Below are positions 10,541 through 63,713 of a DNA stretch of 64,000 bases, piece after piece. The position numbers and the translations under genes were made by a program. This stretch comes from Mytilus edulis (taxonomy: Eukaryota). The DNA lies in assembly GCF_963676685.1 (NCBI RefSeq), contig NC_092352.1:6076001-6140000 (forward strand), read 5' to 3'. Each line of letters starts with the position of its first letter. Within the stretch, counting starts at the first letter, position 1. A model generated the notes under the pieces. It had not been told where the DNA came from. It saw only the letters and a list, made by a program, of their open reading frames with translations, and made no database searches.

Positions 10541-10719
10541 TGCATTTTGGGGGTTGGGGGAACATGCCCTTTTCGGTGGTGAAATCTTTGTTTTCTATTG
10601 CTGATCACAATGAAGAAAAGCATAGCATATAGGAGTATTTCTCTGAGCCCTGTTTCTTCATCAAAAGTTTATTCATGATTTGTTACTGTATTCATAAAAA
10701 CGTATTAATCATATTTCAG

Positions 10720-28098: not shown

Positions 28099-28198
28099 NN
28101 NNNNNNNNNNNNNNNNNNNNNNNNNNNNNNNNNNNNNNNNNNNNNNNNNNNNNNNNNNNNNNNNNNNNNNNNNNNNNNNNNNNNNNNNNNNNNNNNNN
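28099..28198. other. Assembly gap (100 N)
   Basis: Run of N. Confidence 1.
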
Positions 28199-31141
28199 CA
28201 TCTATACCAATATGACACTGCAAGTTGAATGGGAAGACCAAACAACCCAACATGTCAACATACAACAAGGAATACGTCAAGGAGCTAAACTATCTACTCT
28301 CCTGTACAAAATGTATAACACCACTATCCTAAAGGCAATCACAGGCAGTCACCTCGGAACAAAGATAGGTGCGGACGACATTGCTCTACTAGGTGACTGA
28401 ACCACAGGATATACAAGCAATGCTTAACATTATTGAATTCCATACAAAGAGAGACATGGTGAAAATAACCCAGAAAAATCAGAAGTCCTATGTACATAAA
28501 AGGAAAGAACTACCAATAAAAACATACACCCTCGGTGAGAAACAAATCAACAGAGTAGACAAGCTGAAACATCTTGGTATTAGAAGGAATGTCAAAAGCA
28601 AAGTAAACACTGATGAAAGGCTAAAAACTGGTAGACACACATATATGCACTTCTAGGATCTAGCCTACATGCACGTACAGGAATGTGCCCGCTATACTCT
28701 GCAAAATCTGGAAGACATATGTAGTCCCAAGATATCTCTATGGTCTGGAAGTACAAATCTGCACAAAAGCTGATATATACTAGCTGGAAAAACTACAGAG
28801 AAAAATATTTAGACAATTCCTTAGTCTACCTGAAAGGACTGCAACCTCGGCTCTCTATATTCTCCTAGGAGCGGAACCAGTTGAAACTATATAAGACAGA
28901 AATATGCTATCATTATTCCTTACAATCTCTCGGCTAGATAATGCAAAAGAAAAGACAATCCTACAGTGGGAACTTGAAATTGGAAAGGACTTCACAGAAT
29001 CCCTCATAAACAGAATAGATAAAATTTTAAATAAATAGTCTGCCAAATCCAAAAGAAATTTTAGCAAACCCGCCATCAAAATACAAATGAAAAAACATGC
29101 TGAAAAAAGCCATAAATATATACTGGTTAAATATCGGGAAAAAGGAATGCCTAATAAAAACAACCATTAAGTACTTGACAATCCAAGAAAATCCTACTGA
29201 AAACCCACATAATATCTGGAAAGCTGCCAGAAACAATCAGAATGACATTCGAAAAGCAGAATTCAAAAGTAGGCTAATAACTGGAACCTACATGCTACAA
29301 ACAACTAAAGCGAAATTTAGCAAAAATCAAATATCAAGAATATGTGAGCTATCATGTTCCAAAGCTGAGGAGGACATTAAGCACTTTCTGCTGGAATGTG
29401 AGTCTCTCGAGAGTGTTCGACTAAAACAGATGAACAAATTTCTATCTTTAACCGAGTTCAAAGGGGAAGGTGATAAAGCTAATTATAAAGAGGATGTGCT
29501 TCAAATTATATTGCACTGCTCAAAGCTATCAACAACTAGCCTATCCCACCTAAAAGCAAATGACCTGATAGAAATAGAAAAACAAATCTCAAAATTTCTG
29601 TCACAAAATGCATAAGAAACGCACCAAAATGCAAACACGATGATACGACTAGATTAGCTGCTTACATCTAATTATATGCCAAGACCTTGGCAGTTCACCT
29701 TTTACTCTAATTTTACGATATATGAAAGTTTTTTTTTAGTTACTGATATTTTTTTTTTTAATTGGTAACTTTATCTCTTAAAAGCTATTTTTTTTACCAT
29801 ACTGCCAAAAATTTAATCCCATACTTTTTGTTTTGTTTGATCAACTTATTTTTACCTTTTATCCTTTGATTTTCACATTTTAATCCTTTAATTTAATAAA
29901 CATTTGATGGAAATGTCTCATGAAAAGGAATCAAAACGGTTTTTAAAATCAATAACTCCAACCTAGGTAGAATCATAAATGATGTAAATAGCACTTAGCT
30001 GTAAACACTTGTTCTTAAAATTCAGTTTTACCTGTATATAAAGTTTTTTAAACTTGAGCACCCCACCACACTGTAAATATCTGTAAATATTTTAAAACCA
30101 TATATCCCAAGTGGGAGTGCTCCGATATATAACAGAGGAAATTACCTGAACAGAACAGAATTGGTCATTTCGGAATCTTCTCTTTTTCTAATTGTTGAAG
30201 GCCCTACGATGAGCTATAGATATTAGTTTGGTGACCATGTCATTTGGTTTACACGGAGAGTTGTCTTATTGGCAATTATGTAAAAGCTCTTTTGTTCCGA
30301 CGTTGGAAAGTTCCGGGCAGAAAGAACTAACTAGTCGAAAAGTTCCGGAGGAACTTATTAACTATAGTTACTTTGTTCTTCTGGTTTAAAAGTTCCACCG
30401 GAACAAAGCGACTAGTTGAAAAGTTCCAACTATTTTTAATTTGTACCAAACTTGGACAGAACCTAGTTTATGATCAAAAGCTAGTATCTAGAAGGAAATT
30501 TTGTTAATATTTTTGTGAAAAAAATTGGTTGCTTATATAGGGAATCACTCAAGCATGACTGGAGCGGGCCCCCACTTATGAAAATTTCTAGATCCGCCAG
30601 CGAGTCCAATGATTGGGTTTAATATGCGAGCACTCGATCCAGTCTCTTTTACTGGAGACATTTGAACTCTGATGAACGTGATGGTATATACCATTAGAAA
30701 GTTCTTCTACTGCTGTAGTACTGTCAGTGTCTAGGACAGAAAGCAAACGACTATCACTGCCAACAAGCGTTACATACACAATATATTACATAGAACCTAT
30801 TGCTCAAGTGTCCGAGAAATGGACAAAACCGAAATAACGTCAACTTAGCCAAGACGAACACCTTACAAGAAAGCCTTTTACCACATAGTTAATGGGTTAC
30901 TCATATGCAGGGAGTATTTTCCCAAGCAGTCACTGATCAATGACATGTTAGATATCAGAATATACTTGTTAATTAAATGTCTCATTTCTCATTTACAAGA
31001 CATGTATTTCGTGTCAAAAATTTGACAACAATCCAAATTCACAGTATCAACCTGGCATAAATTGTCCAAACTTGTGTAAAACTGTTAAGTGGGTCTCATT
31101 GGGGTCTAAGCGTGACGCGGGATTGCCGTTTTATTGTAAGC

Positions 31142-34100
31142 ATGACACTGATAATATCAGGAATTGAACAAAACCCAGGCCCTGTTCAAAACGGCTGCGG
31201 AATATGTCGTAAATTAGTCAAAAGAAATGACAAAGCAATACAATGTGACGAATGTGATTTATGGATACATACACGTTGTACATCGGTTGACAACACAACG
31301 TACACTAAATTACAGAACACAAATGATCAATGGTTCTGCCAAAACTGCGTTGCACCATGCGGAATTTGCTCTGGCAACATACATAACTGTGACCCAGCAA
31401 TCGAATGTGACCGATGTAAAACATGGATTCATAACTCCTGTGCAATAGTGCCAAATAATGAATATAAAAACATACAAGCAACAAATTGTACATGGATTTG
31501 TCCATTATGCGATGAAACAAACTTATCAACATCATACTCAAGTACTTCATCAGGCATAGAAATCAACAATATATTTGATACACTCAGAAACAACAAAGAG
31601 ACACACACATGTAGTAGACACATTTATACCAGTAAGATCACAATGGTTTCCATCAACATCAATGGTTTAAGAGGAAAAAAACTTGAACTGCAAGCATATT
31701 TACAAACGGAAAACCCAGACATAGTAGCACTGCAAGAGACCAAAATCAATAACAGCATTGCAACCAATGAATTAATTCCAGACACATTGGGCTATGATAT
31801 ATACCGCAACGACAGAACAGGCAATGGGGGAGGCACAATGTTACTCGTCAAAACACACCTTGACTCAGCACCTGTGAAGATCCTCGAAAATGGATCAGAA
31901 TCTATTTGGAGCAAAATAGTATTGCAAGGAAAACAGCATTACATAGGAAGCTGGTATAGACCACCTGATGCCCCTTTGGATCAAGTACAACTTCTTAAGG
32001 ACCAAATGGATAAAATCAAGAAACTAGGAAAAGCAAACAAACAACCATGCATTCACATCTTGGCTGATTTTAACTACCGTAAAATAAATTGGCGGACAAA
32101 GCTAAATAAAGATACCAACACATGCCTTAATGGTAGTGACGGCCAAGCATTGATAGACATACTAAATGAAGCTAGTGCTGAACAACTCATCCTATTTCCA
32201 ACCAGGGAAAGTAATACACTAGACCTTTTAATAACAACATTACCAGGGCAGTTCACAGACATCCACTCACCTGATCGGTTGAGCGACCACGACATTGTCA
32301 TGGGTACTCTGCGATGCACAATACCAAGAAAAATAAGACCAGAAAGGACCTCCTACCAATACTCGAAAGGAAATTACAATCAGATGAGAGATGACTCAAG
32401 GGACTTTACCAGAGACAAATACTTCAACGGCCATCAAAATAACAGAAATGTGGAAGAAAACTGGATCATGATAAAAGAATTCATACTAGGAACCACCAAA
32501 ATAAATGTACCAACTAAAATATTAAAAGGAAAACAGTCAATACCATGGATAAATAAAAACATCAAGACCATGATAAAACGAAAGAACAGAACACATGCCA
32601 ACTATAAAAGAAACAACAGCATGAGAATAAAACGAAAATGGCAAGAATTAAGACGCAATATTAACAAGGAAATTGAATTAGCCCACAACAACTATGTCAA
32701 CAACTTAATAGGCGATATAAAACAAGACTCTAAACCCTTTTGGAAATATATCAACAACCAGAAAGCAGACAAACAGGGAATACCACCACTTAAGACTCAT
32801 GATAATAAGACCGCCGATACAGACCAACAAAAAGCTGAGGCATTGAACACTCAGTTTACAAGTGTATATACAGAGACAAAATATGAATCTGTTCCATACC
32901 AAACTCCTCCTGTAGACAAAATGATAAACATCATAGTAACAACAAAGGGTGTAGAAAAAAATACTAAAAAATATTAATGCATCAAAAGCGATGGGCCCTG
33001 ATGGTATACATCCAAGAGTACTTGAAGAACTGGCACCTAACATATCAGAGGTAATGGCTCACTTTTTCCAGCAATCCATCAACAGAGGAACCATCCCAGA
33101 CGAATGGAAAAATGCTAATATATGCCCACTATTCAAAAAGAACGACAGAACCATCCCAAGCAATTACAGACCAGTTTCCCTAACATGTATCACTTGTAAA
33201 TTACTAGAACACATCATTTGCTCAAACCTAATGCAGCACTTTGAAAAACACAACATCCTAAATAGCCGACAACATGCATTTAGAAGAAGACACAGCTGTG
33301 AAACCCAACTTATCAACGTTATACATGACTGGGCAACTGCTATTGATAAAAGGAAACAAACAGATATATTTATTTTGGATTTTGAAAAAGCTTTTGACAC
33401 CGTACCGCACGAGCTCTTAAAAAGTAAACTTCACAAATATGGCGTGCCCAAAAACATCTTAAATTGGATTGACGCTTTTCTATCTAAAAGATCTCAGTGT
33501 GTGATAGTAAACGGAGTTAAATCGGAAACATCATCAGTCCTATCAGGAGTTCCTCAAGGAACGGTTCTTGGTCCAATCCTATTTCTGGTCCATATCAACG
33601 ACATAGCAGATAACGTAACATCAGAAATTAGGCTGTTTGCAGACGACTGTGTATGCTACAGAGAAATTAATACTGAAGATGACTGTGCTGAACTACAGAA
33701 GGATATTGATACCCTAGGTAACTGGGCGACAGATTGGGGAATGAGATTTCAACCAGTTAAATGCAACATGATGACATTGAGTCGCAAGAAGAAAACAACA
33801 TCATTTAAATACACCTTGAAAAATACGGAACTCCAATTTCTAACATCAATAAAATATCTAGGAGTTAACATCACGAATGATCTACACTGGGGTAAGCACA
33901 TAGAGGAGATATGCAATAAATCTTACAGGACATTAGGTTTACTAAAAAGAAATCTATCCGCATGTCCACTTGAAGTTCAACTCCAGGCCTATAAAGGACT
34001 GATACGACCTGTCCTAGAATATGCAAGCACTGCCTGGGACCCACATCAACTATATCTCCAAGACCAACTGGAAAATGTACAGAAAAGAGCGGCTAGGTTT

Positions 34101-34437
34101 ATAACATCAAACTACACTGATTACGAACCAGGAAGTATGACAGCGATTTTAGATCAGCTACAATTACCCTCACTGAAAGACCGTCGTACACAAAACAGAT
34201 TAATTCTTTTCTGCAAGAATATACATGGTCAATCAAACTTACCATCTGACCAACTGAAAAAACCATCCCGTACAACTAAGAACATGCAGTCAACATTTCC
34301 TCCGACTTCAAGCAAAAACAGACACGTTAAAATACAGTTTTATCCCAAATACCATTAAAGATTGGAACCTACTACCACCGGATATCTTCACCAAAATTCA
34401 GACAGCAGAAGAACCAGCTAAAACCTTGAAATTGTAA
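31142..34437 (+). pseudogene. ORF2 PHD-PHD-EN-RT with two frameshifts
   Basis: An extra A in the A-run near 32955-32962 separates ORFs 31112-32977 and 32991-34358; a second shift near 34288 restores QHFLRLQAKTDTLKYSFIPNTIKDWN. Confidence 0.85.
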
Positions 34438-46887: not shown

Positions 46888-47198
46888 ATGTACAGATCGA
46901 CAGGAATAACTGTGAAAGGCTTGGTGAATTTAACCCAAAGAAAAACTATCAATGTTGTATTCAATACAAAGACTTCATCCTTTAGATTTATTCACCCGTA
47001 CCTAAATAATAACAATCATTTGACATGGAGGATTCAGCCTTCCTGCTGTGTACACTCTGAGGCTGTAAGACCGGAGAAAGCTGAAAAACCAGCTGGTTAT
47101 TCTGACTTTGGTCATAAAAAAACAAGGTCATGGTCAAAATTAAAGTGGTTCACCCATATAATGTGTGCAGGATCAATGTGTTTTGTGTTATTTGGAGG
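46888..47198 (+). CDS. MICU1: MICU1 first coding exon (mitochondrial-targeting-like N-terminus)
   Basis: Acceptor tttcag ends at 46884, ATG 46888, basic/hydroxylated N-terminus then a hydrophobic stretch; donor at 47199 is phase 2 and fits the next exon. Confidence 0.75.
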
Positions 47199-47549: not shown

Positions 47550-47676
47550 ACCAACTATTTTAGAAGAATGGTTGAAAGTTGAAGCCTCATCAAAAGAAGT
47601 TGATAAAGGTGATTCTGATGAAGTAGAGGAAGGCAAACGCAAGAAGACACAGAAAATTGGTTTTAGAGATAGAAGG
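47550..47676 (+). CDS. MICU1: MICU1 coding exon 2
   Basis: PTILEEWLKVEA..EEGKRKKTQKIGFRDRR (polybasic region and GFRDR motif); AG/GT. Confidence 0.9.
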
Positions 47677-48358: not shown

Positions 48359-48518
48359 GTTATTGAATATGAAAATCGTATCCGGGCATACTCTACTCCA
48401 GACAAAATTTTTCGTTACTTTGCTACACTGAAGGTACATCATAATGGAGCATCAGATGTATATATGACACCAGAAGACTTTGTTAGATCTATTACTCCAG
48501 GAATGAAACAACCAGAAG
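48359..48518 (+). CDS. MICU1: MICU1 coding exon 3
   Basis: [39 protein letters not shown], a hallmark MICU1 sequence. Confidence 0.97.
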
Positions 48519-49008: not shown

Positions 49009-49046
49009 GTTTAGGCTTAGATCAGTTTATGAAGTATGATCCACAG
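49009..49046 (+). CDS. MICU1: MICU1 coding exon 4 (38 nt)
   Basis: GLGLDQFMKYDPQ; ends in phase 0 with donor GTAAAT. Confidence 0.92.
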
Positions 49047-50374
49047 GTAAATTATTTAAATTAGCATCATTACATAATGGTAACAAGATAATTTGATAGA
49101 AAGGTTTCAGTATGACTTAATATGAATATGAGTTATTTCCCTTTGACTGCAATATTTGAGGGTGAAATAGTTCATTTTCTTATTTGAAACATGTGGTTCA
49201 AACAGGTCTGATAAAATATCCTTACTAGAAAGTAGTGATGAATCAAGCAAGGGGAAAAGAAATTTAAAATATTGCTTTAATTCTAGTGGTCAGTATAACG
49301 TGTTGAAGTTGGCTTATTTATGAACGGAATTTATAGACCTCCAAAATGGTGACAAAAGGGAAGTAACTTTTAATGAAATTATGTCAATCGCAACCTTGCT
49401 ATTGCTTTGTCTTTTAGAAAAAAATGATAATACAGACTATAGTGGCTAAACATTGTAAGAGAAACAAATGATAGTCATCTTGTGATATGTTTTATTTGAT
49501 AAACCTATTAGCCTTGTCAGGTATAAGCAGTCCTTTGTAGTAGTCAATTGTCTACAAATATTCTTTAGTTGTTTAATAAACATTAAGGAGATCTGTTGTA
49601 CATTTTCATTAATATTTTTTTTTCAAAGATAAAGTATAATACATGCAAATTGTAGAAAATAAAGATCTGGCCTTGTATTAATTAAATATATCATTTGGAA
49701 AAAAAACGAAATTTTAATCGGAATGGATGTCTTTGGATTTCATAGGAAATGTATGAGAAGATATTATTGAAATTCAAAAAAGTTATATCATAAATTGAAG
49801 AAATCTATTCCAATTTTAGATAAAACTAATTGAGATTTTAATTTTATAAAAAAAAAAGAGAAATATAAGGTTTAGTTAATACTTATTATTCAATTTCTTT
49901 AAGTATTATTCATGCACACACTTTACTGTTTTAGTTTTTTTATTGTTGTTTCTTTGACATATTGTTCACAGTTGGTTGGTATATCATGCAACTAAGGTGC
50001 AGATGCCTATTTTTAATTTAAAATATTAGGTAAAATGTCCTGCTTTTATCCCCTTTTCTTATTTTTCTTATTTTGCTTCAGTATTTCATTATTTTAGGTC
50101 ACCTTGCTCAATGGGTCCGTTTGAATTTTGCTGTCACCTGATGTCAATTAAAATGTTATACATGTATATAACATATGGGCTAAAACATGTAAACTGGAAC
50201 CGTTAATGAAAAGATTTAATAATATTTAACAGATATTTACTATAAAATTGTTTACAAAGTGGTTACAGATAATATGCAAGTTTCATATCACTTGAACTTC
50301 ATTTGTATGAATGAAATACCTTCAACCCTAAAGGTTATATCAAAAATTAAGTTTTATCCTCTTTGGCACTTGAT

Positions 50375-50990
50375 GAGGCTGGTGAATATGTCTGTACCCA
50401 TTTTTAGTTGGATGATATCCTATACCACATAAAAATAGCGGAAATCTGCCTGTACTATTTTAAGCCGATCAAATCTTCCTGTACCACATAAACCAGGTTA
50501 ATATCTGTCAAAATAAAATAGACCTGTGATATCTCCCTGAACTATTTTAAGTAAGTTGATATTTTCTTATAACACTCCAGAATAGTTGAAATATACCAAT
50601 GTAAGATTGTTGATATCTGTCTGTATCATTTATAAATGGCTTCAATTGTTAATTACTATCTGTTACCTTTTAAGCAGATTGATATCTTAATGTACCATTT
50701 CAAACTGGTTGATATCGGCTTATACCATTGTAAGATGGTTGGTATATACGTCTGTACTATTTATAAACTGGTTGATTCAACTTGATATCTGCCTTCACTA
50801 TTGAAGATGGTCGATGTCTTATTGTACCATGGTCTGACACTTCAAACATGTTGATATTTACCTGTACAATTATTAGATTGATGATGTTAACTGTACTAAT
50901 TAAGGCGGTAGATGTTGGCCTGTATAATTAAAAGCATGAGGACGTCTGCTTGTACGATTGCTAGATGGTTTGTGTTTGTCTGCAGCACTT
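50375..50990. repeat. Degenerate ~30-bp tandem repeat
   Basis: Recurrent gttgatatct..ctgtac(c/t)att units at ~30-bp spacing. Confidence 0.6.
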
Positions 50991-51244
50991 CAGCCCATCA
51001 ATACTAGGATATACAATTTAAAAAAAAGTTAAAGTTTTTTCCTATACAATAAATGTCTGCCAGTGTCTAATAAAAAGGGAGAACCATTCATTGTATATCA
51101 GTTTTTTTAGCTCACCTGGCCCGAAGGGCCAAGTGAGCTTTTCCCATCACTTGGCGTCCGTCGTCGTCCTGCGTCCGTCGTCCGGCGTTAACTTTTACAA
51201 AAATCTTCTCCTCTGAAACTACTGTGCCAAATTTAACCAAACTT

Positions 51245-52770
51245 TTTTTGTAATTTATTTTTATTTCATCTGAAAATACACCAAGTATATATTGTGATAC
51301 ATAATTATATAATTAATTCATATTACATATAATGATATTAAATTTTTCAATAACAGTCTAAAATTAAAAAGTTAGTTATGCTAATTGTTCTAAATTTTCT
51401 ACTGGATCATACACATCCTTTATCACTCTGGATTAGAATACCTGAATATGCTGATAAGGTTAATGATTGCATCAGCCCTCTCCTATAGCCACATGCATCA
51501 CTGCCTATACAGTGATGTAAAACATGAGAGGTACCAGGAGAGGCCACCAGAGATCATTAACAGATAACATATTGGACAACATGTTGGACAGAGTCACATA
51601 ATAAATGTCAACCTAAGTCAAGGGGAGATAATTCAAATACAATCAAACAAAAACTAGTATATCAATATATATATATAACAATAGCAATAAACATAGATAG
51701 TACTTTTAAGATGCACACAAATCACTGTCCAGTTGTGATGTGCATCAACATATTATTAATTCTACATGAACTATTATAAAGCCTTAAGTAAGTACATAAA
51801 TAGAAAGATCTCTCCTCAAATGTGAACTAAGTTTTTAATTAATTCCCATTTACTATTAAATTTCTCTCTTGCTCTAGGGGATCTGTAAAAGGAGGTAGAT
51901 ATTTTTTCTATTTGGTAGGAATTTTTAATCATAGCTATGACACCTTTAAGAGTCGGTAATGAAGTATTAAAGCGACATGTATAAATATAATATTTAACCA
52001 GAATAGTGAATAAGTTTAGGGAAATATCCCAAGACTCTGACCCGAGAACAATATTTTCCACATTAAGAATTAAAGTTAAATTATTTTCAACTAGAAAAAG
52101 TGCTGCAATTTCTAACCACAAATTTCTAACTAGCATACATTCCCAGAAAAGGTGACTTATAGTTTCTTTAGTTTCATTACAGAAACTACATAAGTTAGTT
52201 TCTTTTAACCCGTATTTCTGCAATAATGCATTTGTAGCGAGAGTTCTATGTAAAATCTTAAACTGGAACATACTAAATTTGTTGTTTTTAGTGCAACAAA
52301 AGGGTAAACTATAAAAGAAATCCCAATTTTCTATATAAGTCCCTAGTTCCTTACACATTTTGTCTTCTTGTTTTGTAGGACGTTCTGTATACATTGACAA
52401 GAATTTTTTATAAAAGAACTGACATGACTTTTTATTGTTTTTTATAAATTCAAATTTATCGTTAGATATGTGAGTAATTTTCTCTGAAGTAGTGATTAAA
52501 TTTTTCCAGTCTTTTGGTATCATATGCAGCAAAGAATGGTATTCCAAGAAATTAATATTAAGATTATATTTTTCGCAGAATTCTTTTAAAGTAAAAAAAT
52601 TACTGTTTTCATCAAGTAAATCACCTATAAAGAAAACTCCTGATTCAACCCACCTCTGGTAAAAGACAGTTTTATTATTAATTTTCAAACTCTTGTTTAG
52701 CCATATGGATTGTTTCATGATCCCTTCAGCAGTGCCATTAGTGACAGTGTTTAGGATATTCCAGTTTAGT
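51245..52770 (-). mobile_element. 5'-truncated L1/Tx1-clade LINE insertion
   Basis: 16-bp TSD AAATTTAACCAAACTT (51229-51244, 52771-52786); short poly(A) and AATAAA on the minus strand; open ORF2 C-terminus. Confidence 0.9.
51816..52769 (-). CDS. L1/Tx1 ORF2 C-terminal fragment with zf-RVT zinc finger
   Basis: FQFKILHRTLATN..CSFCNETKETISHLFWEC; the frame stays open up to the truncation point. Confidence 0.85.
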   Translation of the reverse strand, partial: LNWNILNTVTNGTAEGIMKQSIWLNKSLKINNKTVFYQRWVESGVFFIGDLLDENSNFFTLKEFCEKYNLNINFLEYHSLLHMIPKDWKNLITTSEKITHISNDKFEFIKNNKKSCQFFYKKFLSMYTERPTKQEDKMCKELGTYIENWDFFYSLPFCCTKNNKFSMFQFKILHRTLATNALLQKYGLKETNLCSFCNETKETISHLFWECMLVRNLWLEIAALFLVENNLTLILNVENIVLGSESWDISLNLFTILVKYYIYTCRFNTSLPTLKGVIAMIKNSYQIEKISTSFYRSPRAREKFNSKWELIKNLVHI

Positions 52771-54262
52771 AAATTTAACCAAACTTGGCCACAATCATCA
52801 TTTGGGTATCTAGTTTAAAAAATGTGTCCGGTGACCCGGCCAACCAACCAAGATGGCCGCCATGGCTAAAAATAGAACATAGGGGTAAAATGCAGTTTTT
52901 GGCTTATAACTCAAAAACCAAAGCATTTAGAGCAAATCTGACATGGGGGTAATATTGTTCATCAGGTCAAGATCTATCTGCCCTGAAATTTTCAGATGAA
53001 TCGGACATTTCGTTGTTGGGTTGCTGCCTCTGAAATGATAATTTTAAGGAAATTTTGCTGTTTTTGGTTATTATCTTGAATATTATTATAGATAGAGATA
53101 AACTGTAAACAGCAATAATGTTCAGCAAAGTAAGATCTACAAATAAGTCAACATGACCAAAATGGTCAGTTGACCACTTTAGGAGTTATTGCCCTTTATA
53201 GTCAATTTTTAACCATTTTTCGTAAATCTTAGTATTCTTTTAGAAAAATCTTCTCCTCTTAAACTACTGGGCCAAATTTAACCAAACTTGGCCATAATCA
53301 TCATAGGGGTATCTAGTTTAAAAAATGTGTCCGGTGACCCGGCCAACCAACCAAGATGGCTGCATGGCTAAAAATAGAACATAGGGGTAAAATGCAGTTT
53401 TTGGCTTATAACTCAAAAACCAAAGCATTTAGAGCAAATCTGACAGGAAGTAAAATTGTTGATCAGGTCACGATCTATCTGCCCTGGAATTTTCAGATGA
53501 ATTGGATAATTGGTTGTTAGGTTGCTGCCCCTGAATTGGTAATTTTGAGGAAATTTTGCTGTTTTTTTGCTGTTTTTTTTGTTATTATCTTGAATATTAT
53601 TATAGATAGAGATAAACTGTAAACAGCAATAATGTACAGCAAATTAAGAACTAAAAATAAGTCAGAATGACCAAAATAGTCAATTGACCCCCAAAGGAGT
53701 TATTGCCCTTCATAGTCAATTTTTAACAATTTTCTTAAAATTTGAAGATTTTCAATAACATTTTCCACAGAAAGTACTGTTATAGATAGAGATAATTGCA
53801 ACCAGCAAGAATGTTTAGTAAAGTAAGATCTACAAACACATCACCATCACCAAAACACAATTTTGTCATGAATCCATCTGTGTCCATTGTTTAATTTCAC
53901 ATAGACCAAGGTGAGCGACACAGGCTCTTTAGAGCCTCTAGTTTCTAATAGTAACACAGTGGCGGATCCACATGGTGTTTTTTTACGATCAATGCATTTG
54001 AATGGAGACATATGGTTGGACCCCCCCCCCCCCTTTTTTTTTCTCCTGGGTTGTTGGAACCCCCTTTTATAAATGACTGGAATGAAACCACTGGAAATAT
54101 TTTCACCTAATTTCGGTTAATTTGAGATAAATTAAAGCTGCTGGATTCGTCCCTGTAATGTGACCAATAACCATAGAACTAAATAAATCAATCAGTCAGT
54201 TTGTGCATGTTTTTATAGTTAGTTTGTATATATATATATTTGTATACTCTGTAATCTTACAG

Positions 54263-54274
54263 GATCCGAGAGTA
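54263..54274 (+). CDS. MICU1: Candidate MICU1 alternative microexon A (12 nt, DPRV)
   Basis: cttacag|GATCCGAGAGTA|gtatgt; phase 0, no stop. Confidence 0.5.
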
Positions 54275-54616
54275 GTATGTAAAGTTGAGCTTTCTTTGTG
54301 TGACATGATCAGTTCAATCAGAACTTGCTAAATAATTCTGTGTGGGCTGACTCTGACTTAACTGGTTATAGGCTGTGTAGTATAATGTAGATGTAAAGTT
54401 TTAGGCTTTGATGCACCATTCATAGTCATAGGCCATATATGCTAATCATTGGTAAGGGGTTATCTCCCCTTCCTGATTGTAAACATTGGCTAGCAATAGA
54501 AATATTAGGTTGAATTTGTTTGGCTGACTTGTGTAGATGTTTGTTGCTACATATAATCATATTGTATATGAATTAAAAAAGAATGTTGAATAATGTGCTT
54601 TGTTTAACATCAATAG

Positions 54617-54637
54617 AAGGATGATTTCAGAAAGTTG
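54617..54637 (+). CDS. MICU1: Candidate MICU1 alternative microexon B (21 nt, KDDFRKL; NAGNAG alternative 18 nt)
   Basis: tgctttgtttaacatcaatag|AAGGATGATTTCAGAAAGTTG|gtgagt; phase 0. Confidence 0.5.
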
Positions 54638-54865
54638 GTGAGTGGCTTACCATTTTACTAACATTTCTTGAGGATTTTTAATAATCCATTTTTTATATTT
54701 TTCATCTTTTGAATTTTAAAACAGATTTTATTATCTTATGCTAAATCTTTAAAAAAAAATATCATTCTTTACTTTGTTTTTTTTTTCATTAAAAGATATT
54801 TTAAAAAATTATATATATATATATTAGATGTTGTGAGGTGTTTTAAGTTCAAAGTTTTTTTGTAG

Positions 54866-54883
54866 ATGAGCAAAATGAAAAAG
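54866..54883 (+). CDS. MICU1: Candidate MICU1 alternative microexon C (18 nt, MSKMKK)
   Basis: tttttttgtag|ATGAGCAAAATGAAAAAG|gtaaat; phase 0. Confidence 0.5.
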
Positions 54884-55625
54884 GTAAATTGTAGTAGATA
54901 TTTTTTTGTATTGTAAGTCTTATGTAGTAAATAATATAGTATAGTAACTTTTCTTTGATAAAATCTTTTGGTATTGTAGTAGGCATTTTTTAGTATGGAT
55001 TATTGAAACCCTCTTTTCTAATTCAGTTTACTGCTTTTTGCTTGTTACTTTGCTTAAAAATTTGTTATTATAACTGATGATAAATTTTCACTATTTTGAA
55101 TAATAACTTATTTTCAGAAATATATCCCTTTCAGTGACTGTGATTTGATCCGATTCATCTCTTCTTTCTTGAATGTGGCATGATTGATTTTATAAAAAAA
55201 AAAGAAGAAAGGATTGTGCATTGACCTAAATATACTAAAAACATGCATTACATAACATGCATGAATTGTTGCATGTTTTATTTCAGCCACCATAATAGCA
55301 ATAACATGCATTGATATTGAAGAAACCTAAAATGATTTTTTTTTATTACACGTTTTTTTCCCTCATTGATGTTGAAATTGTGCTCTACCTAAGTAAAGTT
55401 AAATTTCTTGACAGTTTGTTTAAGAATGTAAAACAGCTGACTTGAACAAAATGATTCTAAAACATGTGACTGTAAGTATAAGTGTATGTAGAAGTGAGTT
55501 ATTGCCTAGGTCGTATCCAGCTGCGCTTGGCAAACCATTTTTTTTTTAATTTTTTTTTTTTTTACCATGTTACAGTCCACTTTTTTGATTGATTGAAAGT
55601 TGTTTGCCAAACATCCATTGGTAAA

Positions 55626-57744
55626 TTTTTATACGACCGCAAATTTTGAAAAAATTTTCGTCGTATATTGCTATCACGTTGGCGTCGGCGTCGTCGTCGT
55701 CGTCGTCGTTGTCGTCGTCGTCGTCGTCGTCCGGCGTCCGAATACTTTTAGTTTTCGCACTCTAACTTTAGTAAAAGTGAATAGAAATCTATGAAATTTT
55801 AACACAAGGTTTATGACCATAAAAGGAAGGTTGGTATTGATTTTGGGAGTTTTGGTCCCAACATTTTAGGAATAAGGGGCCAGAAAGGGCCCAAATAAGC
55901 ATTTTCTTGGTTTTCGCACCATAACTTTAGTTTAAGTTTATAGAAATCTATGAAATTTTGACACAAGGTTTATGACCACAAAAGAAAGATTGGGATTGAT
56001 TTTGGGAGTTTTGGTTTCAATAGTTTAGGAATAAGGGGCCAATAAAGGGCCCAAATAAGCATTTTTCTTGGTTTTTGCACAATAACCTTAGGTTAAGTAA
56101 ATGGAAATCTATGAAATTTAAACACAATGTTTATGACCACAAAAGGAAGGTTGGTATTGATTTTGGGAGTTTAGGACCCAACAGATTAGGAATTAGGGGC
56201 CAAAAAGGGACCCAAATAAGCATTTTTCTTGGTTTTCGCACTATAATGTTAGTATAAGTAAATACAAATCTATGAAATTTAAACACAAGGCTTATGACCA
56301 TAAAAGGAAGGTTGGTATTGATTTTGGGAGTTTTGGTCCCAACAGTTTAGGAAAAAGGGGCCCAAAGGGTCCAAAATTAAACTTTGTTTGATTTCATCAA
56401 AATTGAATAATTGGGGTTCTTTGATATGCCGAATCTAACTGTATATGTAGATTCTCAACTTTTGGTCCCGTTTTCAAATTGGTCTACATTAAGGTCCAAA
56501 GGGTCCAAAATTAAACTTAGTTTGATTTTGACAAAAAATGAATCGGTTGGGTTCTTTGATATGTTGAATCTAAAAATGTACTTAGATTCTTGATTATTGA
56601 AGTTTTTTTGGTCCAGTTTTCAAATTGGTCTACATTAAGGTCCAAAGGGTCCAAAATTAAACTTTGTTTGATTTCATCAAAAATTGAATCCTTGGGGTTC
56701 TTTGATATGCCAAATCTAACTGTGTATGTAGATTCTTCATTTTTGGTCCTGTTTTCAAATTTCAAATTCTACATTAAAGTCCAAAGGGTCCAAAATTAAA
56801 CTAAGTTTGATTTTAACAAAAATTGAATTCTTGGGCCTCTTTGATATGCTGAATCTAAACATGTACTTAGATTTTTGATTATGGGCCCAGTTTTCAAGTT
56901 GGTCCAAATCAGGATCTAAAATTATTATATTAAGTATTGTGCAATAGCAAGTCTTTTCAATTGCACAGTATTGTGCAATGGCAAGAAATATCTAATTGCA
57001 CAATATTGTGAAATAGCAAATTTTTTTTTAATTAGAGTTATCTTTCTTTGTCCAGAATAGTAAGCAAGAAATATCCTATTTGTGCAATAGCAAGAATTTT
57101 TTTTAATTGGAGTTATCTTTCTTTGTCCAGAATCAACTTAAATCTTTGTTATATACAATATACAATGTATATACACTTTTTACTACCAACTGATAAATTT
57201 AAATAATCTTTTACCATTCAGTGATAACAAGCAGTTTTTTTACATCTTAATATTTTATGATGTATTTAAATGAGTAGTTATTGTTGCAAACTCCATTAGA
57301 AATTTGAATTGATATCAGTTTTGAAAAAGGGAAACGGGGATGTGAAAAAAAGGGGGGGGGGTTAAATTTTTCTCATTTCAGATTTCATAAATAAAAAGAA
57401 AATTTCTTCAAACATTTTTTTGAGAGGATTAATATTCAACAGCATAGTGATTTGCTCAAAGGCAAAAAAAACCTTTTAAGTTCATTAGACCACATTCATT
57501 CTGTGTCAGAAACCTATGCTGTGTCAACTATTTAATTTTAGATTTAAAAAGTTTGAAGAAGAAATCTTTAATTGATTTGTAAAAATTTGTTTTGTGTAAA
57601 AAAAAACCATGTAATGTCAAAAATTTGATCACAATCCAAATTCAGAGCTGTATCATGCTTGAATGTTTTGTCCATACTTGCCCCAACTGTTCAGGGTTCG
57701 ACCTCTGCGGTCGTATAAAGCTGCGCCCTGCGGAGCACCTGGTT
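55626..57744 (+). mobile_element. HINE-like family A copy 4 (intronic)
   Basis: subTIRs at 55628-55641 and 57706-57719, long (GTC)n, both tandem arrays. Confidence 0.88.
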
Positions 57745-59201
57745 CATTCATGTTAAGTATGATGCAGAATTATCCAAATCTTATAGTAATGGCTCAGTTT
57801 CTCTGCCTAATTATAGCTTGGAAAATCACACATTCATGGATTAACCTCTTATTTTAGTAAAAGTAGATAAAAGTTTTAGCATTTGTCCTCAAATCAAGCC
57901 TGTGTATGGAGACTTTAAAATACAGGCATACTTCCATCCTTCTGGTCTTACAAATGCTCATCATGTAAAATTCTTGCCATATTTTTATGAAATTCATATT
58001 AAGAGTTTATTTCTGAAATCTCTCAGACAAGCTAGTAAATCAGAGTCAAACATCAGGCCTACATATCATGATGAAATTTGTATCTGTAATGTCTTTGACA
58101 AGTTAAAAAAAAAACAGTGCTGATCAATTATTTTTACATTAGCTAATGTCCCTTGGAAAATTCTAAAGGAAATTTCATTTAAACACTTGCAATTCTTCTT
58201 TTTTTTTTTTGAAATTTATATCCGAAGTTTTAATCAGCAAGGTCTTGAAAGAGTGCTGAAGTTATTTTTGTCAGGAACTAACCCTTGGAAATAAAAATTA
58301 TATGGAAAGTACATTGTTAGCTTTTTGATATTTATGATATTTATAACAAGAACACCCTAAAAATAATTGCCCTTTGTAAATAGATTGTGTGTATCTGCAG
58401 GGAACATTTAAACACTGTACTTCAATTATTTGCTGAAATTAATTGTGTTGATCCATGAATGATGGAGATAGTTTCTGAATGCACATAATAAAATAAATGC
58501 ACAGTAAGTAGCAGTATTTCTTATTTTCTACTAAACATCACTAGGACATGGAGGATAGCAAGGGGTATTCAGGATTTCACAAGAATGGAATGAAAATTGA
58601 AAATATGAGATAAATAATTGTAAAATCCTACATAATCCATAAAGCTGTCATCACTGATCTTTTCTGAGTCCAAGTCAACAAACAGAGATGCCATCATTTT
58701 CTTAAAAAGTGAGAGAAAAATGTGAAATCTCCTGTAAAGAGCTAATTGTTTCTAAACCCTGACTAAAACTGCTCTTACTATCCTTTAAACAAAGGTTCTA
58801 TACTCATTTACAACCAAACATAGCTACCACAAGTGCTAAAAAGAAAAAAAATAACATTAATAAAAATCTAAAAAATGATGTACATGGCCAATTATTTTAG
58901 CAAACATTGGATAAGTTATATATTTAAGATTCCCGTTAGAAATCATGGTTGATAACCACAATCATCATCAGTGTTACTTGAAACAAAAACTATTTTTTTT
59001 TAAATAATGAAATTAGGACCTGACCATAAAGAAAATTTTGAGTGATTAATCCTTATTTTGATCTACTCAATCTATATAAACTTATCATTCAATTAAATAC
59101 ATGATTTTTGGAAGTATAAATTAGGTAAGTTTTATTAATATATATTTGTATACCTATCAGTGTAAGACACATCTGTATTCACTGTTTATATTATTCTCTA
59201 G

Positions 59202-59313
59202 CGTGGAAAGCATGTGGATACAGAGTTGGGAGAAGATAGCATTTTTCACAGGTTGGGAGAAAGTGGACTTATTTCTTTTTCTGACTACATTTTCCTTCTA
59301 ACAGTGTTGTCAA
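59202..59313 (+). CDS. MICU1: MICU1 coding exon 5
   Basis: [37 protein letters not shown]; starts in phase 0. Confidence 0.95.
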
Positions 59314-59567
59314 GTAAGTAACATGCTGAAGAGATTAACTGAAATGATAGCAGGCGTTCAACAAATAATTTATAATCATAAGTTAAAAACAAAAAATTTT
59401 GATAAAATCATCAGTGGGACTCTTTATACACTACTAGCCAGAATACATGCGTAGACTTCAATCAAGAGATCTCTGCATGTTGGAATCCAATGAATTTAAG
59501 AAAATTAACACTAAAATAAAATGCAATGAATATCAAAATTCAGACTACCAATGCAGAATAAAAAGAG

Positions 59568-59830
59568 AGGGGCCTCAGTGGCCAAATGGTCTAAGTAGTT
59601 ACTACTGTAATCACTAGCCAGTCAACACTGAGGTTGTGAGTTCGAACCCTTATCTTGCGAGTGCACTCGACTCTAATCTTAATTGACTAGGATTGTCAGT
59701 TTTCCTATCAAGGGTCATGGTTTTCTACGGGCATTCAGGCTTCCTCCACCAATAAAAAGATGGCTGCCAGAAAATCATTCAAAAGTGATGCTTAGAAGTG
59801 GCGTTAAAACACAGCAAAATCAAATCAAAT
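59568..59830 (+). mobile_element. tRNA-derived SINE with V-domain-like core
   Basis: A-box-like tggccaaatggtctaag, B box gagttcgaaccc, core ggttttctacgggcattcaggcttcctccacc, (CAAAT)n tail. Confidence 0.75.
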
Positions 59831-59911
59831 ACAAAGACATAAATGTGCTACAATAGAGAATACACATTTAGCAGAATACATATTGAACATGTTATATCTT
59901 GTTTATTACAG

Positions 59912-59994
59912 CTCCCCAAAGAAATTTTCAGATTGCTTTTAAAATGTTTGATTTGAATGGAGATGGTGATGTTGATAGAGGAGAGTTTGACAAG
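59912..59994 (+). CDS. MICU1: MICU1 coding exon 6 (EF-hand 1)
   Basis: [28 protein letters not shown], a canonical EF loop. Confidence 0.97.
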
Positions 59995-60927
59995 GTAAAC
60001 ATTTTTAGTGGGGTTTAATCATTTTACTTGCATAAGAAAGTGGCGTCCATAGATTATTATTTTTTTTTATTTTTTTTTTTTTTTTAAATAATATCTTTAT
60101 TGCACTTTTCTTTGCTGTTATGACAAATCACTCGACCTACAGCAGTTGGCCAAGAATCCCTGTGAATTAGTCACTGGATAACCAGGGAATTTATTCAGTG
60201 AATTCATATTTATAGATAGCTTGTTATTTTTACAATTCATGGTTATTACATACATTTTGCAAAATATATTGTCTCATGATTACAGTTTTGTCCGGTTCTG
60301 TTTCTAAAGATTAAAACTTTATGATCAGTAACCTACCTTACTCTTATTGTTGAAAACCGTTGTCCGAATTAATTTATACGTTTTATTGATTCTCATGAAC
60401 AACTTAAACTTAAGTTAAAAATTGTATGTGGTAAGTCTCGACATTCTAATTGAAAATTCATTTGATTAATTATGCATAAATGTGTTTGGAGACAAAATTC
60501 TGTACATTTTCAGAAAGCATGCTCTTTAGATTATTTTTAAACAATTCTTTAAAAGAAGAATTTTGACTATAGGTTGCATGTAGTAAATACAGTTGTTTCA
60601 CAAACCACACCTCTTTTGGGGAGATATATAGTACATGTAATCATTGTTTATGTACTGATTCCCAGATATGATCTCTATGTTTCATCTCATAGACACAATT
60701 AGGGAATGCTACCAGTATATATAGACATATATAGCAGTGTAATTAAATTCTGAGGAAGACCCATAGTGAAAGGAGGGGTAGTACAGAATTTTAGGATAAG
60801 TCTAAACTCTTAGAAGTTTGGGGCATTTAAATGTTGAAAATAAACTCTTTGTTTTGACCTTTGAATAAAAAAAATAGTGCATATTAACTTTCCATTTTAG
60901 GATATAATTGGTATGAAACTTCCTAGT

Positions 60928-61513: not shown

Positions 61514-61708
61514 GTCCAAGAGATAGTACGAGCACAGACCACGATGGGAAGTCGACACAGGGATCATGCTGTAACAGGCAGTGTTATGAAGGATTACAGC
61601 TCAGCATTAATGACCTACTTCTTTGGAAAAAATGGAGAGAAGAAATTAACAGTCAAAGAGTTCTTAGATTTTCAAGCAGAAGTTTCCAAAGAAGTTCTAA
61701 GAATTGAG
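61514..61708 (+). CDS. MICU1: MICU1 coding exon 7
   Basis: VQEIVRAQTTMGSRHRDH..SALMTYFFGKNGEKKLTVKEFLDFQ..VLRIE. Confidence 0.95.
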
Positions 61709-62519: not shown

Positions 62520-62669
62520 TTTGCAAGATATGATCCCAGATATGAGAAAGATGGTTCTATATCAGAGAAAGATTTTGCCTCTATACTTCTTACCTACGCA
62601 GGATATCCAGACAGCAAAAAATCCAGGATGGTGAAAAGGGTTAAAAAGAAGTTCAAGGACGATCCAAAG
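62520..62669 (+). CDS. MICU1: MICU1 coding exon 8 (gene continues beyond the window)
   Basis: FARYDP..DGSISEKDFASILLTYAGYPDSKKSRMVKRVKKKFKDDPK. Confidence 0.93.
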
Positions 62670-62708: not shown

Positions 62709-63713
62709 TTTTTATACGACCCCAAAATTTTGGGTTGTTATAATGGTATGATGTCGTCGTCAGCATCGTCTGCGTCGTCCGAAGACACTTTGGTTTCCAG
62801 ATAATAACTTTAGTTTAAGTAAATAGATCTTAATGAAATTTTTTCAGAAGGTTCAATACCACTAAAGTAAGGTTGGGATTTATTTTGGGGATGATGGTCC
62901 GAACCGTTTAGGAATTAGGGGCCCAAAAGGGGCCAAAACAAGCATTTTTCTAGTTTCAGGATAATAACTTGTTTACCGGTATTTCAATTGCTTTGAAAGT
63001 ATACTGCAATGTTTAAAATCACAAGTAGAAGGTTTGGATTCATTTATGGGGTTATGGGGCCAAAGTTTAGGAATAAAGGGCCAAAAAGGGGCCAAAACAA
63101 GCATTTTTCTAGTTTCCAGACAATACCTTGTGTGTAATTGAATGGATCTCTCTGAAATTGTACCACAATATACCATATAACAAAGGGGGGGCTGGGATTA
63201 AGTTTTGGGTTAATTGCCCAAAATATTTAGGAATTAAGGGCCAAAAAAGGGCCAAAAAGAAGCATGTTTCTAGTTTCCAAACCATCATGACAATAACTTG
63301 TGTTTAAGTGTATGGATCTCTCTGAAATCGTACTACAAGGTTTAATACAAAGGAAAGCATGGGATTGAGTTTAAGGGTTATTTCTCCAAGGGGGGGTTTC
63401 AATAAATTGGGGGGGGGGGGGGGTCTCAGTTTACCATTTTTTTAAGGGATTTTTTTTTTTTGTCAACATTTTTCAAATTTCAAATTTTGAAAAGTTTCAA
63501 TAAGAAATATTCAATTGCACAGTATTGTGCAATAGATGTGTTAGATCTTGAACCACATTAATTTTGTGGCAAAAACCTATATTATGTCAAAAATTTGATC
63601 ACAATCAAAATTCAGACAGTATCAAGCTTGAATATTGTGACCAAATTTGCCCCAACTGTGCAGGGTTCGACCACTGGGGTCGTATAAAGCTGTGCCCTGC
63701 GGAGCACCTGGTT
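62709..63713 (+). mobile_element. HINE-like family A, divergent subfamily (copy 5)
   Basis: subTIR TTTATACGACCCCA/TGGGGTCGTATAAA, divergent ~160-bp array, same 3' terminus as the other copies. Confidence 0.8.

What the first reader, a model, noticed from the sequence alone, without database searches (positions are those of the whole stretch)
54241..54890. Cluster of three in-frame microexon candidates at the site of the mammalian MICU1.1 microexon
Seen: in the 10-kb phase-0 intron between ..DQFMKYDPQ and RGKHVD..SIF, three AG-exon-GT units of 12 nt (DPRV, 54263-54274), 21 nt (KDDFRKL, 54617-54637, with a NAGNAG option) and 18 nt (MSKMKK, 54866-54883) lie within 620 bp of apparently TE-free sequence. 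All are multiples of 3 and stop-free, with plausible donors (GTATGT, GTGAGT, GTAAAT). Known: mammalian MICU1 has a 4-aa muscle microexon (EFWQ, MICU1.1) in this same loop before EF-hand 1, which raises Ca2+ sensitivity. Inference: this mollusc has an ancient or convergent, possibly combinatorial or mutually exclusive, microexon cassette tuning mitochondrial Ca2+ uptake by tissue; standard annotation would miss it.
Basis: partly seen in the sequence, partly recalled or inferred. Interest (0 to 1): 0.85.

Follow-up and report, generated by a model that had tools for sequence, protein, structure and literature searches.

The report
Three real MICU1 microexons in mussel
They are already in public gene models of four Mytilus species and lie where vertebrates insert their muscle/brain MICU1.1 microexon, so this spot seems to be an old place for varying the regulator of mitochondrial calcium uptake.

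Summary
Confirmed. The window carries the 5' two-thirds of MICU1 on the + strand. Its exons are 100% identical to residues 1-399 of Mytilus edulis isoform X2.

- **The units.** In the 10,155-nt phase-0 intron between ..KYDPQ (exon ends 49046) and RGKHVD..
- **Chance.** The bare pattern is common (128 in this intron). These three have the three best splice-site scores and lie in a single-copy island.
- **Decisive evidence.** RefSeq/ENA protein isoforms of M. edulis, M. galloprovincialis, M. trossulus and M. californianus, plus de novo transcript assemblies, carry five forms here: none, m1, m2, m3 and m2+m3.
- **Age.** An m2-like 7-8-residue cassette (K-D/E-x-hydrophobic-x-x-L) recurs in scallops, oysters, clams, abalone and snails. 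Insects, decapods and vertebrates ([D/E]FWQ plus a 2-residue exon) have 4-residue cassettes at the same place.
- **Wrong sub-claim.** Standard annotation did not miss these exons.
- **Untested.** Tissue use and any effect on Ca2+ handling. The one read-laying run was swamped by an intronic transposon.
- **Open.** Orthology with the vertebrate microexon.

The parts
46888..47198 (+). MICU1 exon 1, coding part (MYRSTG..VLFG-)
   Evidence: Exact match to P0280 (M. edulis MICU1 isoform X2) residues 1-104; ORF.
47550..47676 (+). MICU1 exon 2 (PTILEE..GFRDRR, polybasic KRKK)
   Evidence: Exact match to P0280; splice sites read.
48359..48518 (+). MICU1 exon 3 ([17 protein letters not shown]-)
   Evidence: 67-79% identical to MICU1 of other phyla.
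49009..49046 (+). MICU1 exon 4 (-GLGLDQFMKYDPQ), ends in phase 0
49047..59201 (+). Phase-0 intron that hosts the microexon cluster
54100..55500 (+). Single-copy island that holds the three microexons, between repeat fragments
   Evidence: Only a self-match in the whole genome; near-zero depth in RNA runs against thousands over 55500-57900.
54204..54209 (+). UGCAUG (Rbfox-type motif) 54 nt upstream of the m1 acceptor
   Evidence: Motif match only; function not shown.
54263..54274 (+). Microexon m1, 12 nt, DPRV
   Evidence: Sequence. The peptide sits between KYDPQ and RGKHVD in M. galloprovincialis X4, M. trossulus X5 and M. edulis CAG2207395, and as EPKV in de novo transcript P0227.
54617..54637 (+). 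Microexon m2, 21 nt, KDDFRKL
   Evidence: Sequence. Present in M. edulis X2 and M. galloprovincialis X1, and as KDDFRTL in M. californianus X1/X2, M. trossulus X1-X3 and Logan P0284.
54657..54662 (+). ACUAAC (QKI-type or branch-point-like motif) 20 nt downstream of the m2 donor
   Evidence: Motif match only.
54866..54883 (+). Microexon m3, 18 nt, MSKMKK
   Evidence: Sequence. Alone in M. californianus X3 and M. edulis CAG2207393. With m2 in M. galloprovincialis X1, M. californianus X1 and M. trossulus X1/X2. MNKMKK in Logan P0284.
55178..55275 (+). GCAUG cluster (GGCAUG 55177, UGCAUG 55258, UGCAUG 55270), 295-390 nt downstream of m3
   Evidence: Enrichment is weak: 4 GCATG in the island against 1.2 expected, and 6% of equal-sized windows reach that count.
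55500..57900 (.). High-copy transposon-like repeat inside the intron; not part of the cassette
   Evidence: RNA depth in the thousands, 'goes back' joints and many variant letters.
59202..59313 (+). MICU1 exon 5 ([37 protein letters not shown]-)
   Evidence: Aligns to human MICU1 residues 190-217. Its donor is confirmed by the RNA joint 59313>59912 in 4 runs.
59912..59994 (+). MICU1 exon 6 (first EF-hand, [10 protein letters not shown])
   Evidence: RNA joint; exact match to P0280.
61514..61708 (+). MICU1 exon 7
62520..62669 (+). MICU1 exon 8; the gene runs on beyond the window

Best explanation
The three units are genuine, alternatively spliced cassette microexons of the Mytilus MICU1 gene. 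They sit in the phase-0 intron that separates the N-terminal domain (..LGLDQFMKYDPQ) from the start of the first EF-hand lobe ([18 protein letters not shown]). Differential inclusion gives at least five proteins: none, +DPRV, +KDDFRKL, +MSKMKK and +KDDFRKLMSKMKK. The inserted 4-13 residues lie in the flexible linker where vertebrate MICU1.1/1.2/1.3 carry EFWQ and a 2-residue exon. Inferred, not shown: as in mammals, the inserts change how the MICU1-MICU2 gatekeeper responds to Ca2+, and inclusion is set per tissue by splicing factors, with Rbfox and QKI as candidates. m2+m3 together are predicted to add a short cationic amphipathic helix to the linker.
For: Shown:
- Exact sequence and splice sites; top-3 splice scores in the intron.
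- The window's exons equal M. edulis X2 residues 1-399, including m2.
- The five isoform types occur in RefSeq or ENA models of four Mytilus species.
- Alignment-free de novo transcript contigs of 1.7-2.9 kb encode about 500-residue proteins with EPKV (P0227), KDDFRTL+MNKMKK (P0284) or the direct junction (P0244, P0247, P0248).
- Between lineages, frame and length are kept and the changes are conservative (DPRV/EPKV, KDDFRKL/KDDFRTL, MSKMKK/MNKMKK).
- m2-like cassettes occur in other molluscs: KDDVHSL, SEDFKQIL, KDNIAAL, KESIADL, KDNLFEM, KDSLDDL.
- The gene is expressed, and the exon 5 donor is confirmed by the RNA joint 59313>59912.
- The site equals the vertebrate one..DGK|DFWQ|(TE)|KISQ.. 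in P0058, P0062 and P0261, and the alignment to human MICU1.

From papers: human exons 5' and 5'' are combinatorial and exon 5' inclusion needs RBFOX2 (PMC8909990). MICU1.1-MICU2 binds Ca2+ more efficiently and opens MCU at lower Ca2+ (PMC8224590).

Supporting the inference: AlphaFold2 puts a helix at 216-225 over m2+m3. The 13-mer has a hydrophobic moment of 0.61 and charge +4, reached by 2% of shuffles. UGCAUG motifs lie at 54204, 55258 and 55270.
Against: - No junction counts for this genome. The single read-laying run was dominated by an intronic repeat and its tables hid low-depth joints, so inclusion levels and tissues are unknown.
- RefSeq XP_ models are predictions, and I could not see their RNA support.
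- The helix has only pLDDT 59-71.
- GCAUG enrichment is weak (p about 0.02-0.06), and its conservation could not be tested because no other mollusc genomic DNA was reachable.
- The mammalian loop is unresolved in crystal structures (PMC8909990), so there is no structural rationale to transfer.
- m1 and m3 were seen only in Mytilus.
Confidence: 0.9

Rival explanations
1. Chance AG...GT units: short in-frame stop-free stretches between AG and GT that are never spliced in.
For: The bare pattern is very common: 128 in this intron and 16 in the flagged 650 nt.
Against: The exact peptides occur between the flanking exons in models of four species and in de novo assembled transcripts. They also have the three best splice scores of the 128.
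Confidence: 0.02
2. Real but functionally neutral splicing: low-level inclusion of weak exons that annotation pipelines pick up, with no tuned role in Ca2+ handling. This is most plausible for m1 and m3.
For: m1 and m3 were found only in Mytilus. No inclusion levels could be measured. In human, the 2-residue exon 5'' alone did not change MICU1 activity (PMC8909990).
Against: Frame, length and chemical character are kept between the M. edulis complex and the M. californianus-like lineage, which differ at about 20-25 of roughly 510 residues elsewhere. m2 has counterparts across Mollusca. The exons lie in a single-copy island in a repeat-rich intron.
Confidence: 0.12
3. Independent (convergent) origin: the mussel cassettes and the vertebrate EFWQ exon arose separately, in an old intron that lies in a permissive disordered linker. 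On this view there is no ancestral bilaterian MICU1 microexon.
For: The peptides differ (DPRV, KDDFRKL, MSKMKK against EFWQ). Cassettes at the site are very varied across phyla: NIDE, HGxQ, NHAE, SAEE and long acidic decapod inserts. The single models returned for hemichordates and echinoderms show no obvious cassette.
Against: Oyster ..DFKQ.. and mussel ..DDFRK.. resemble vertebrate DFWQ. Cassettes of 12 nt recur at exactly this junction in vertebrates, insects, decapods and mussels. The combinatorial layout is the same in human and mussel.
Confidence: 0.6

Closest known systems
Vertebrate MICU1 exon 5' (EFWQ/DFWQ; MICU1.1) and exon 5'' (2 residues; MICU1.2, MICU1.3)
   Same: Same gene. Same junction, after ..D(G/P)(K/Q) and about 15 residues before the conserved DSIF motif. 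Tiny in-frame cassettes (12 and 6 nt against 12, 21 and 18 nt). Combinatorial use gives several isoforms. The inserts lie in a flexible linker away from the EF-hands (PMC8909990).
   Different: Three exons instead of two. The peptides are not alignable beyond a D-F dipeptide. m2+m3 is strongly basic (+4) and predicted helical. Muscle/brain specificity, RBFOX2 dependence and higher Ca2+ sensitivity are shown only for mammals.
m2-like 7-8-residue MICU1 cassette of other molluscs (annotated isoforms of Argopecten/Ylistrum, Ostrea/Saccostrea, Mactra/Ruditapes, Haliotis, Biomphalaria)
   Same: Same position and length (21-24 nt). Shared pattern K-[DE]-x-[FLIV]-x-x-[LMW]. Inclusion and skipping forms both occur within or between close species.
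   Different: Residues 3-6 vary freely. The second cassette differs by lineage (MSKMKK in mussels, KRQMF/KQRLL in clams, DETK in Biomphalaria, a mutually exclusive-looking SQTTSREGN in Haliotis). m1 has no counterpart outside Mytilus in my sample.
Arthropod MICU1 4-residue cassettes (Lepidoptera NIDE/NISE, beetles HG[MVF]Q, Odonata/termite NHAE/NHDK, decapods SAEE)
   Same: 12-nt in-frame cassettes directly after ..YDPK, with skipping isoforms in the same or sister species.
   Different: No sequence similarity to the mussel exons. Decapods add long acidic cassettes as well.
Neural (SRRM3/4, eMIC-dependent) microexon programme
   Same: Size class (27 nt or less), in-frame, in a surface linker of a signalling protein. 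A UGC lies 19-21 nt upstream of the m2 acceptor.
   Different: No evidence here for neural inclusion or SRRM dependence. m1 and m3 lack a UGC near the acceptor. The mammalian counterpart is mainly a muscle exon driven by RBFOX2.

Membership tests
MICU1 exon-5'-type alternative microexon (MICU1.1-like) | The host gene is a MICU1 orthologue. | tested here: met
   Exon 5 hits human MICU1 chains. The full Mytilus protein aligns to human MICU1 89-466 at E = 7e-141. The window's exons equal M. edulis 'calcium uptake protein 1' X2.
MICU1 exon-5'-type alternative microexon (MICU1.1-like) | The cassette lies at the junction between the N-domain exon (..LGLDQ[FY]..D[GP][KQ]) and the exon that encodes ..[12 protein letters not shown]. 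| tested here: met
   Mussel..KYDPQ|insert|[15 protein letters not shown]. Fish and frog..DGK|DFWQ|(TE)|KISQEREKFADEDSIF. There are 15 against 16 residues from the insertion point to the F of SIF. The intron phase in vertebrates was not checked.
MICU1 exon-5'-type alternative microexon (MICU1.1-like) | 30 nt or less, a multiple of 3, with inclusion and skipping forms both present in transcripts. | tested here: met
   12, 21 and 18 nt. Five isoform types in four species, plus de novo transcripts.
MICU1 exon-5'-type alternative microexon (MICU1.1-like) | The encoded peptide is homologous to [D/E]FWQ. | tested here: inconclusive
   m2 KDDFRKL and oyster SEDFKQIL share D-F(-x-Q) with DFWQ, but four residues cannot carry significance. 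m1 and m3 show no similarity.
MICU1 exon-5'-type alternative microexon (MICU1.1-like) | Inclusion specific to muscle and brain, and dependent on RBFOX2. | not testable with these tools
   Run identities are coded and the only read-laying run was swamped by a repeat. UGCAUG motifs exist at 54204, 55258 and 55270, but enrichment is weak.
MICU1 exon-5'-type alternative microexon (MICU1.1-like) | Inclusion raises the Ca2+ sensitivity of the MICU1-MICU2 gate. | not testable with these tools
   Needs Ca2+ uptake assays. Known only for mammals (PMC8224590, PMC8909990).
Pan-molluscan m2-type cassette | A 7-8-residue insert with K-[DE]-x-hydrophobic-x-x-[LMW] directly after ..DP[QKT]. | tested here: met
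   KDDFRKL fits the pattern. Counterparts: KDDVHSL, SEDFKQIL/TGDFKQML, KDNIAAL, KESIADL, KDNLFEM, KDSLDDL, and by alignment only KESLKDL, KDSIPIW and KSSLKFM.
SRRM3/4 (eMIC)-dependent neural microexon | A UGC motif close upstream of the 3' splice site, with neural-specific inclusion. | tested here: inconclusive
   UGC at -21..-19 of m2 only. Tissue data are unavailable.

The most novel reading that the evidence does not exclude
The junction after ..DP(K/Q) in MICU1 is an ancestral bilaterian alternative-microexon site. The 21-nt m2 exon is one orthologous exon kept throughout Mollusca for over 500 My, related by descent to the vertebrate [D/E]FWQ exon 5' and perhaps to the 12-nt arthropod cassettes. 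It would be switched by a conserved Rbfox-type mechanism to set the Ca2+ threshold of the mitochondrial uniporter in excitable or contractile tissues. In mussels, m2+m3 would add a cationic amphipathic helix that changes how MICU1 sits on the membrane or on the acidic EMRE/MCU surface.
Probability: 0.25. Interest if true: 0.7.

Novelty: new member of a known kind. Interest (0 to 1): 0.45.

Why it matters
MICU1 sets the Ca2+ threshold of the mitochondrial uniporter. In mammals a 4-residue microexon at this site gives muscle a more sensitive uniporter, and nobody knows how, because the loop is invisible in the structures. This work shows that mussels run a three-exon combinatorial cassette at the same junction, and that molluscs, insects and crustaceans all have small cassettes there. 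That turns a 'mammalian muscle curiosity' into a comparative problem. There are now many natural insert variants (neutral, basic-helical, acidic) that could be assayed side by side to learn what the linker does. There is also a concrete candidate for an ancient regulated microexon outside the nervous-system set. For annotation, it is a positive control: a sequence-only reader recovered 12-21-nt exons correctly. The exons themselves are not new to databases, and I found no paper on invertebrate MICU1 splicing in the held library.

Tried and rejected
- **Read laying on window:54100-60099** with three raw RNA runs and one contig run. The stretch includes a high-copy, highly expressed repeat (55.5-57.9 kb) that filled the joint and loose-end tables ('299 more' and '1910 more' rows not shown). 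Only the exon 5-6 joint surfaced. I draw no conclusion on microexon usage, and I do not trust my attempts to read microexon pieces out of bin depths. The X3 contig starting at 59200 fits either a direct exon-4 junction or an m3 junction, so it is uninformative.
I could fetch no genomic DNA of other Mytilus or other molluscs, so there was no test of flanking-intron or motif conservation, and no intron phases in other phyla.
- **NAGNAG at m2** (DDFRKL variant): no isoform shows it.
- **GCAUG/Rbfox idea:** motifs are present, but enrichment is only marginal. I keep it as a lead.
- **Deep homology with EFWQ:** the sequences are too short to test. Hemichordate and echinoderm models gave no clear cassette.
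- **Spliced model:** Exons were searched singly by reference, and full-length comparisons used database proteins returned by the tools.
- **Other rules:** The N run at 28099-28198 was left alone.
- **Splice-site matrix:** It is a ranking aid only.
Full report
**What is in the sequence.** The window carries the 5' two-thirds of a MICU1 gene on the + strand.
- The 37-residue exon at 59202-59313 aligns to human MICU1 residues 190-217 (..[28 protein letters not shown]) in all solved MICU1 chains.
- The 65-residue exon at 61514-61708 finds MICU1 across animals.
- Residues 1-399 of Mytilus edulis 'calcium uptake protein 1' isoform X2 (P0280) match the window exon by exon at 100%. Coding exons: 46888-47198, 47550-47676, 48359-48518, 49009-49046, 54617-54637, 59202-59313, 59912-59994, 61514-61708 and 62520-62669.
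- M. galloprovincialis differs at a few residues, so the window is M. edulis or something indistinguishable from it at protein level.
Exons were searched one at a time by reference, and full-length work used database proteins returned by the tools.

**Checking the observation.**
- m1: cag|GATCCGAGAGTA|gtatgt, 54263-54274, DPRV.
- m2: atag|AAGGATGATTTCAGAAAGTTG|gtgagt, 54617-54637, KDDFRKL.
- m3: tgtag|ATGAGCAAAATGAAAAAG|gtaaat, 54866-54883, MSKMKK.

The host intron (49047-59201, 10,155 nt) is phase 0. The bare pattern means little on its own. The intron holds 128 AG-(9-30 nt, multiple of 3, stop-free)-GT units, 16 of them in the flagged 650 nt. With a rough donor+acceptor weight matrix, however, the three rank 1, 2 and 3 of the 128, at scores like the gene's real exons. 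Three random points would fall within 620 nt of a 10-kb intron about 1% of the time. The stretch 54100-55500 is single-copy in the 1.37-Gb assembly. The sequence from 55.5 to 57.9 kb is a high-copy, highly transcribed repeat.

**What they are.** A search seeded with a gastropod MICU1 returned many mollusc MICU1 proteins. Their linker regions were read out. Listing the 90% cluster around the Mytilus entries and printing the linker settled the matter. Between ..GLGLDQFMKYDPQ and [15 protein letters not shown].. the annotated isoforms carry:

| Form | Found in |
|---|---|
| nothing | M. galloprovincialis X5, M. edulis X4, M. californianus X5 |
| DPRV | M. galloprovincialis X4, M. trossulus X5, ENA M. 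edulis CAG2207395 |
| KDDFRKL | M. edulis X2 |
| KDDFRTL | M. californianus X2, M. trossulus X3 |
| MSKMKK | M. californianus X3, ENA M. edulis CAG2207393 |
| KDDFRK(T)L+MSKMKK | M. galloprovincialis X1, M. californianus X1, M. trossulus X1/X2 |

Alignment-free evidence comes from Logan de novo assemblies. Contigs of 1.7-2.9 kb encode about 500-residue proteins, which can only be spliced cDNA for a gene whose exons span more than 15 kb here. They carry EPKV (P0227), KDDFRTL+MNKMKK (P0284) or the direct junction (P0244, P0247, P0248). These contigs come from a M. californianus-like lineage. So all three exons are included in a second lineage, with length and frame kept and only conservative changes (D>E, R>K, K>T, S>N).

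No annotated isoform is longer than m2+m3, and m1 is seen only alone. The observed repertoire is therefore none, m1, m2, m3 and m2+m3. Whether m1 is truly exclusive of m2 and m3 is not established: only 15 of the 39 cluster members were listed.

**Direct reads.** The run search found RNA-like holders and four 2026 raw RNA-seq runs. I laid three raw runs and one contig run on 54100-60099. The exon 5 to exon 6 joint (59313>59912, GT..AG) appeared in all four runs (2, 8 and 26 reads, and a 1.5-kb contig). This confirms expression and that exon boundary.

**Comparison with what is known.** In mouse and human, exon 5' (EFWQ, 12 nt) is inserted after residue 181. A second exon 5'' (2 residues) gives four combinatorial isoforms. 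Exon 5' inclusion needs RBFOX2. The loop is unresolved in the crystal structures (PMC8909990). MICU1.1-MICU2 binds Ca2+ more efficiently and opens MCU at lower Ca2+ (PMC8224590).

Vertebrate proteins in my searches show ..DGK|DFWQ|(TE)|KISQEREKFADEDSIF.. (P0058, P0062, Xenopus P0261). The mussel insertion point..YDPQ|..|[15 protein letters not shown], is 15 residues before the F of SIF, against 16 in human. Same gene, same junction, same combinatorial logic. Sequence homology of the inserts cannot be shown.

**Age of the cassette.**
- *m2-type inserts after ..DP(Q/K/T) in molluscs:* KDDVHSL (Ylistrum, Argopecten), SEDFKQIL and TGDFKQML (Ostrea, Saccostrea, another oyster), KDNIAAL (Mactra), KESIADL (Ruditapes), KDNLFEM (Haliotis, where SQTTSREGN is the alternative) and KDSLDDL (Biomphalaria, optionally followed by DETK).
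- *Skipping forms:* present in the same or sister species, such as Crassostrea gigas X6, Lymnaea, Physella and Mercenaria.
- *By alignment only:* Littorina KESLKDL, Patella KDSIPIW, the chiton Liolophura KSSLKFM and perhaps the nemertean Lineus DELDDW fit the same pattern.
- *Shared pattern:* K-[DE]-x-hydrophobic-x-x-[LMW], which argues for one old molluscan exon.
- *Second cassette:* a short basic exon follows it in clams (KRQMF, KQRLL, KKARK), as MSKMKK does in mussels.
- *Other phyla:* 4-residue cassettes occur at the same junction in Lepidoptera (NIDE/NISE/NMDE), beetles (HG[MVF]Q), Odonata and termites (NHAE/NHDK) and decapods (SAEE). Decapods also have long acidic inserts.
- *Literature:* I found no paper on invertebrate MICU1 splicing in the held library.

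**How it most likely works.**
- *Shown:* five protein isoforms that differ by 4-13 residues in the linker between the N-domain and the first EF-hand lobe.
- *Inferred from the mammalian precedent:* the inserts shift the Ca2+ dependence of the MICU1-MICU2 gate, and inclusion is tissue-regulated.
- *Predicted structure:* AlphaFold2 on M. galloprovincialis X1, with a 59-sequence alignment, places a helix at 216-225 (FRKLMSKMKK) inside an otherwise low-confidence linker, at pLDDT 59-71. The 13-mer has a hydrophobic moment of 0.61 and net charge +4, with F216, L219, M220 and M223 on one face. Only 2% of shuffles reach that moment. A cationic amphipathic helix could touch the membrane or acidic partners. 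This is speculation.
- *Possible regulators:* UGCAUG lies 54 nt upstream of m1 (54204) and twice 375-390 nt downstream of m3 (55258, 55270), and ACUAAC lies 20 nt downstream of m2. An Rbfox factor bound there would be expected to repress m1 and promote m2/m3, which fits m1 being seen alone. The enrichment is marginal, though (3 UGCAUG against 0.5 expected; 6% of equal-sized windows reach the GCAUG count), and conservation could not be tested.

**Verdict.** The claim that standard annotation would miss it is wrong, because RefSeq has these isoforms for four Mytilus species. Function and tissue use are untested. The exons are a new, undescribed member of a known kind. The wider pattern, a bilaterian hot spot with a pan-molluscan exon, is the part worth following up.

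Noticed in passing
window 55500-57900: High-copy repeat inside the MICU1 intron. RNA depth is in the thousands, with about 40:1 strand bias in two stranded runs. 'Goes back 265/545' joints suggest internal tandem units, and many molecules begin at 57339. Related ORF fragments (..KSMKFKHK.YDHKRKVGIDFGSFGPN..) also lie at about 12885-13305, 56197-56388 and 63113-63304.
   Followed up: partly
window 32955-34355 (also 26800-27645, 29091-29612): Long ORFs with a reverse-transcriptase-like sequence (467 aa), probably LINE-type retroelements upstream of MICU1.
   Followed up: no
whole window: GCATG is over-represented on both strands: 118 matches against 84 +/- 9 in dinucleotide-preserving shuffles, and none of the 100 shuffles reaches 118.
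   Followed up: no
proteins P0255, P0268, P0392, P0406, P0414 (decapod MICU1 isoforms): Decapods carry long, glutamate-rich cassettes (20-45 residues) at the same MICU1 junction, besides the 4-residue SAEE cassette. This is the opposite charge to the basic mussel inserts.
   Followed up: no
proteins P0275 and P0274 (M. trossulus X1, X2): These isoforms also differ by an N-terminal MGTNSK extension, which points to an alternative start or first exon.
   Followed up: no
window 53950-54100: A repeat fragment with a C12/T10 run and the ORF ..INAFEWRHMVGPPPPLFF.., similar to 10396-10629, ends just upstream of the single-copy microexon island.
   Followed up: no
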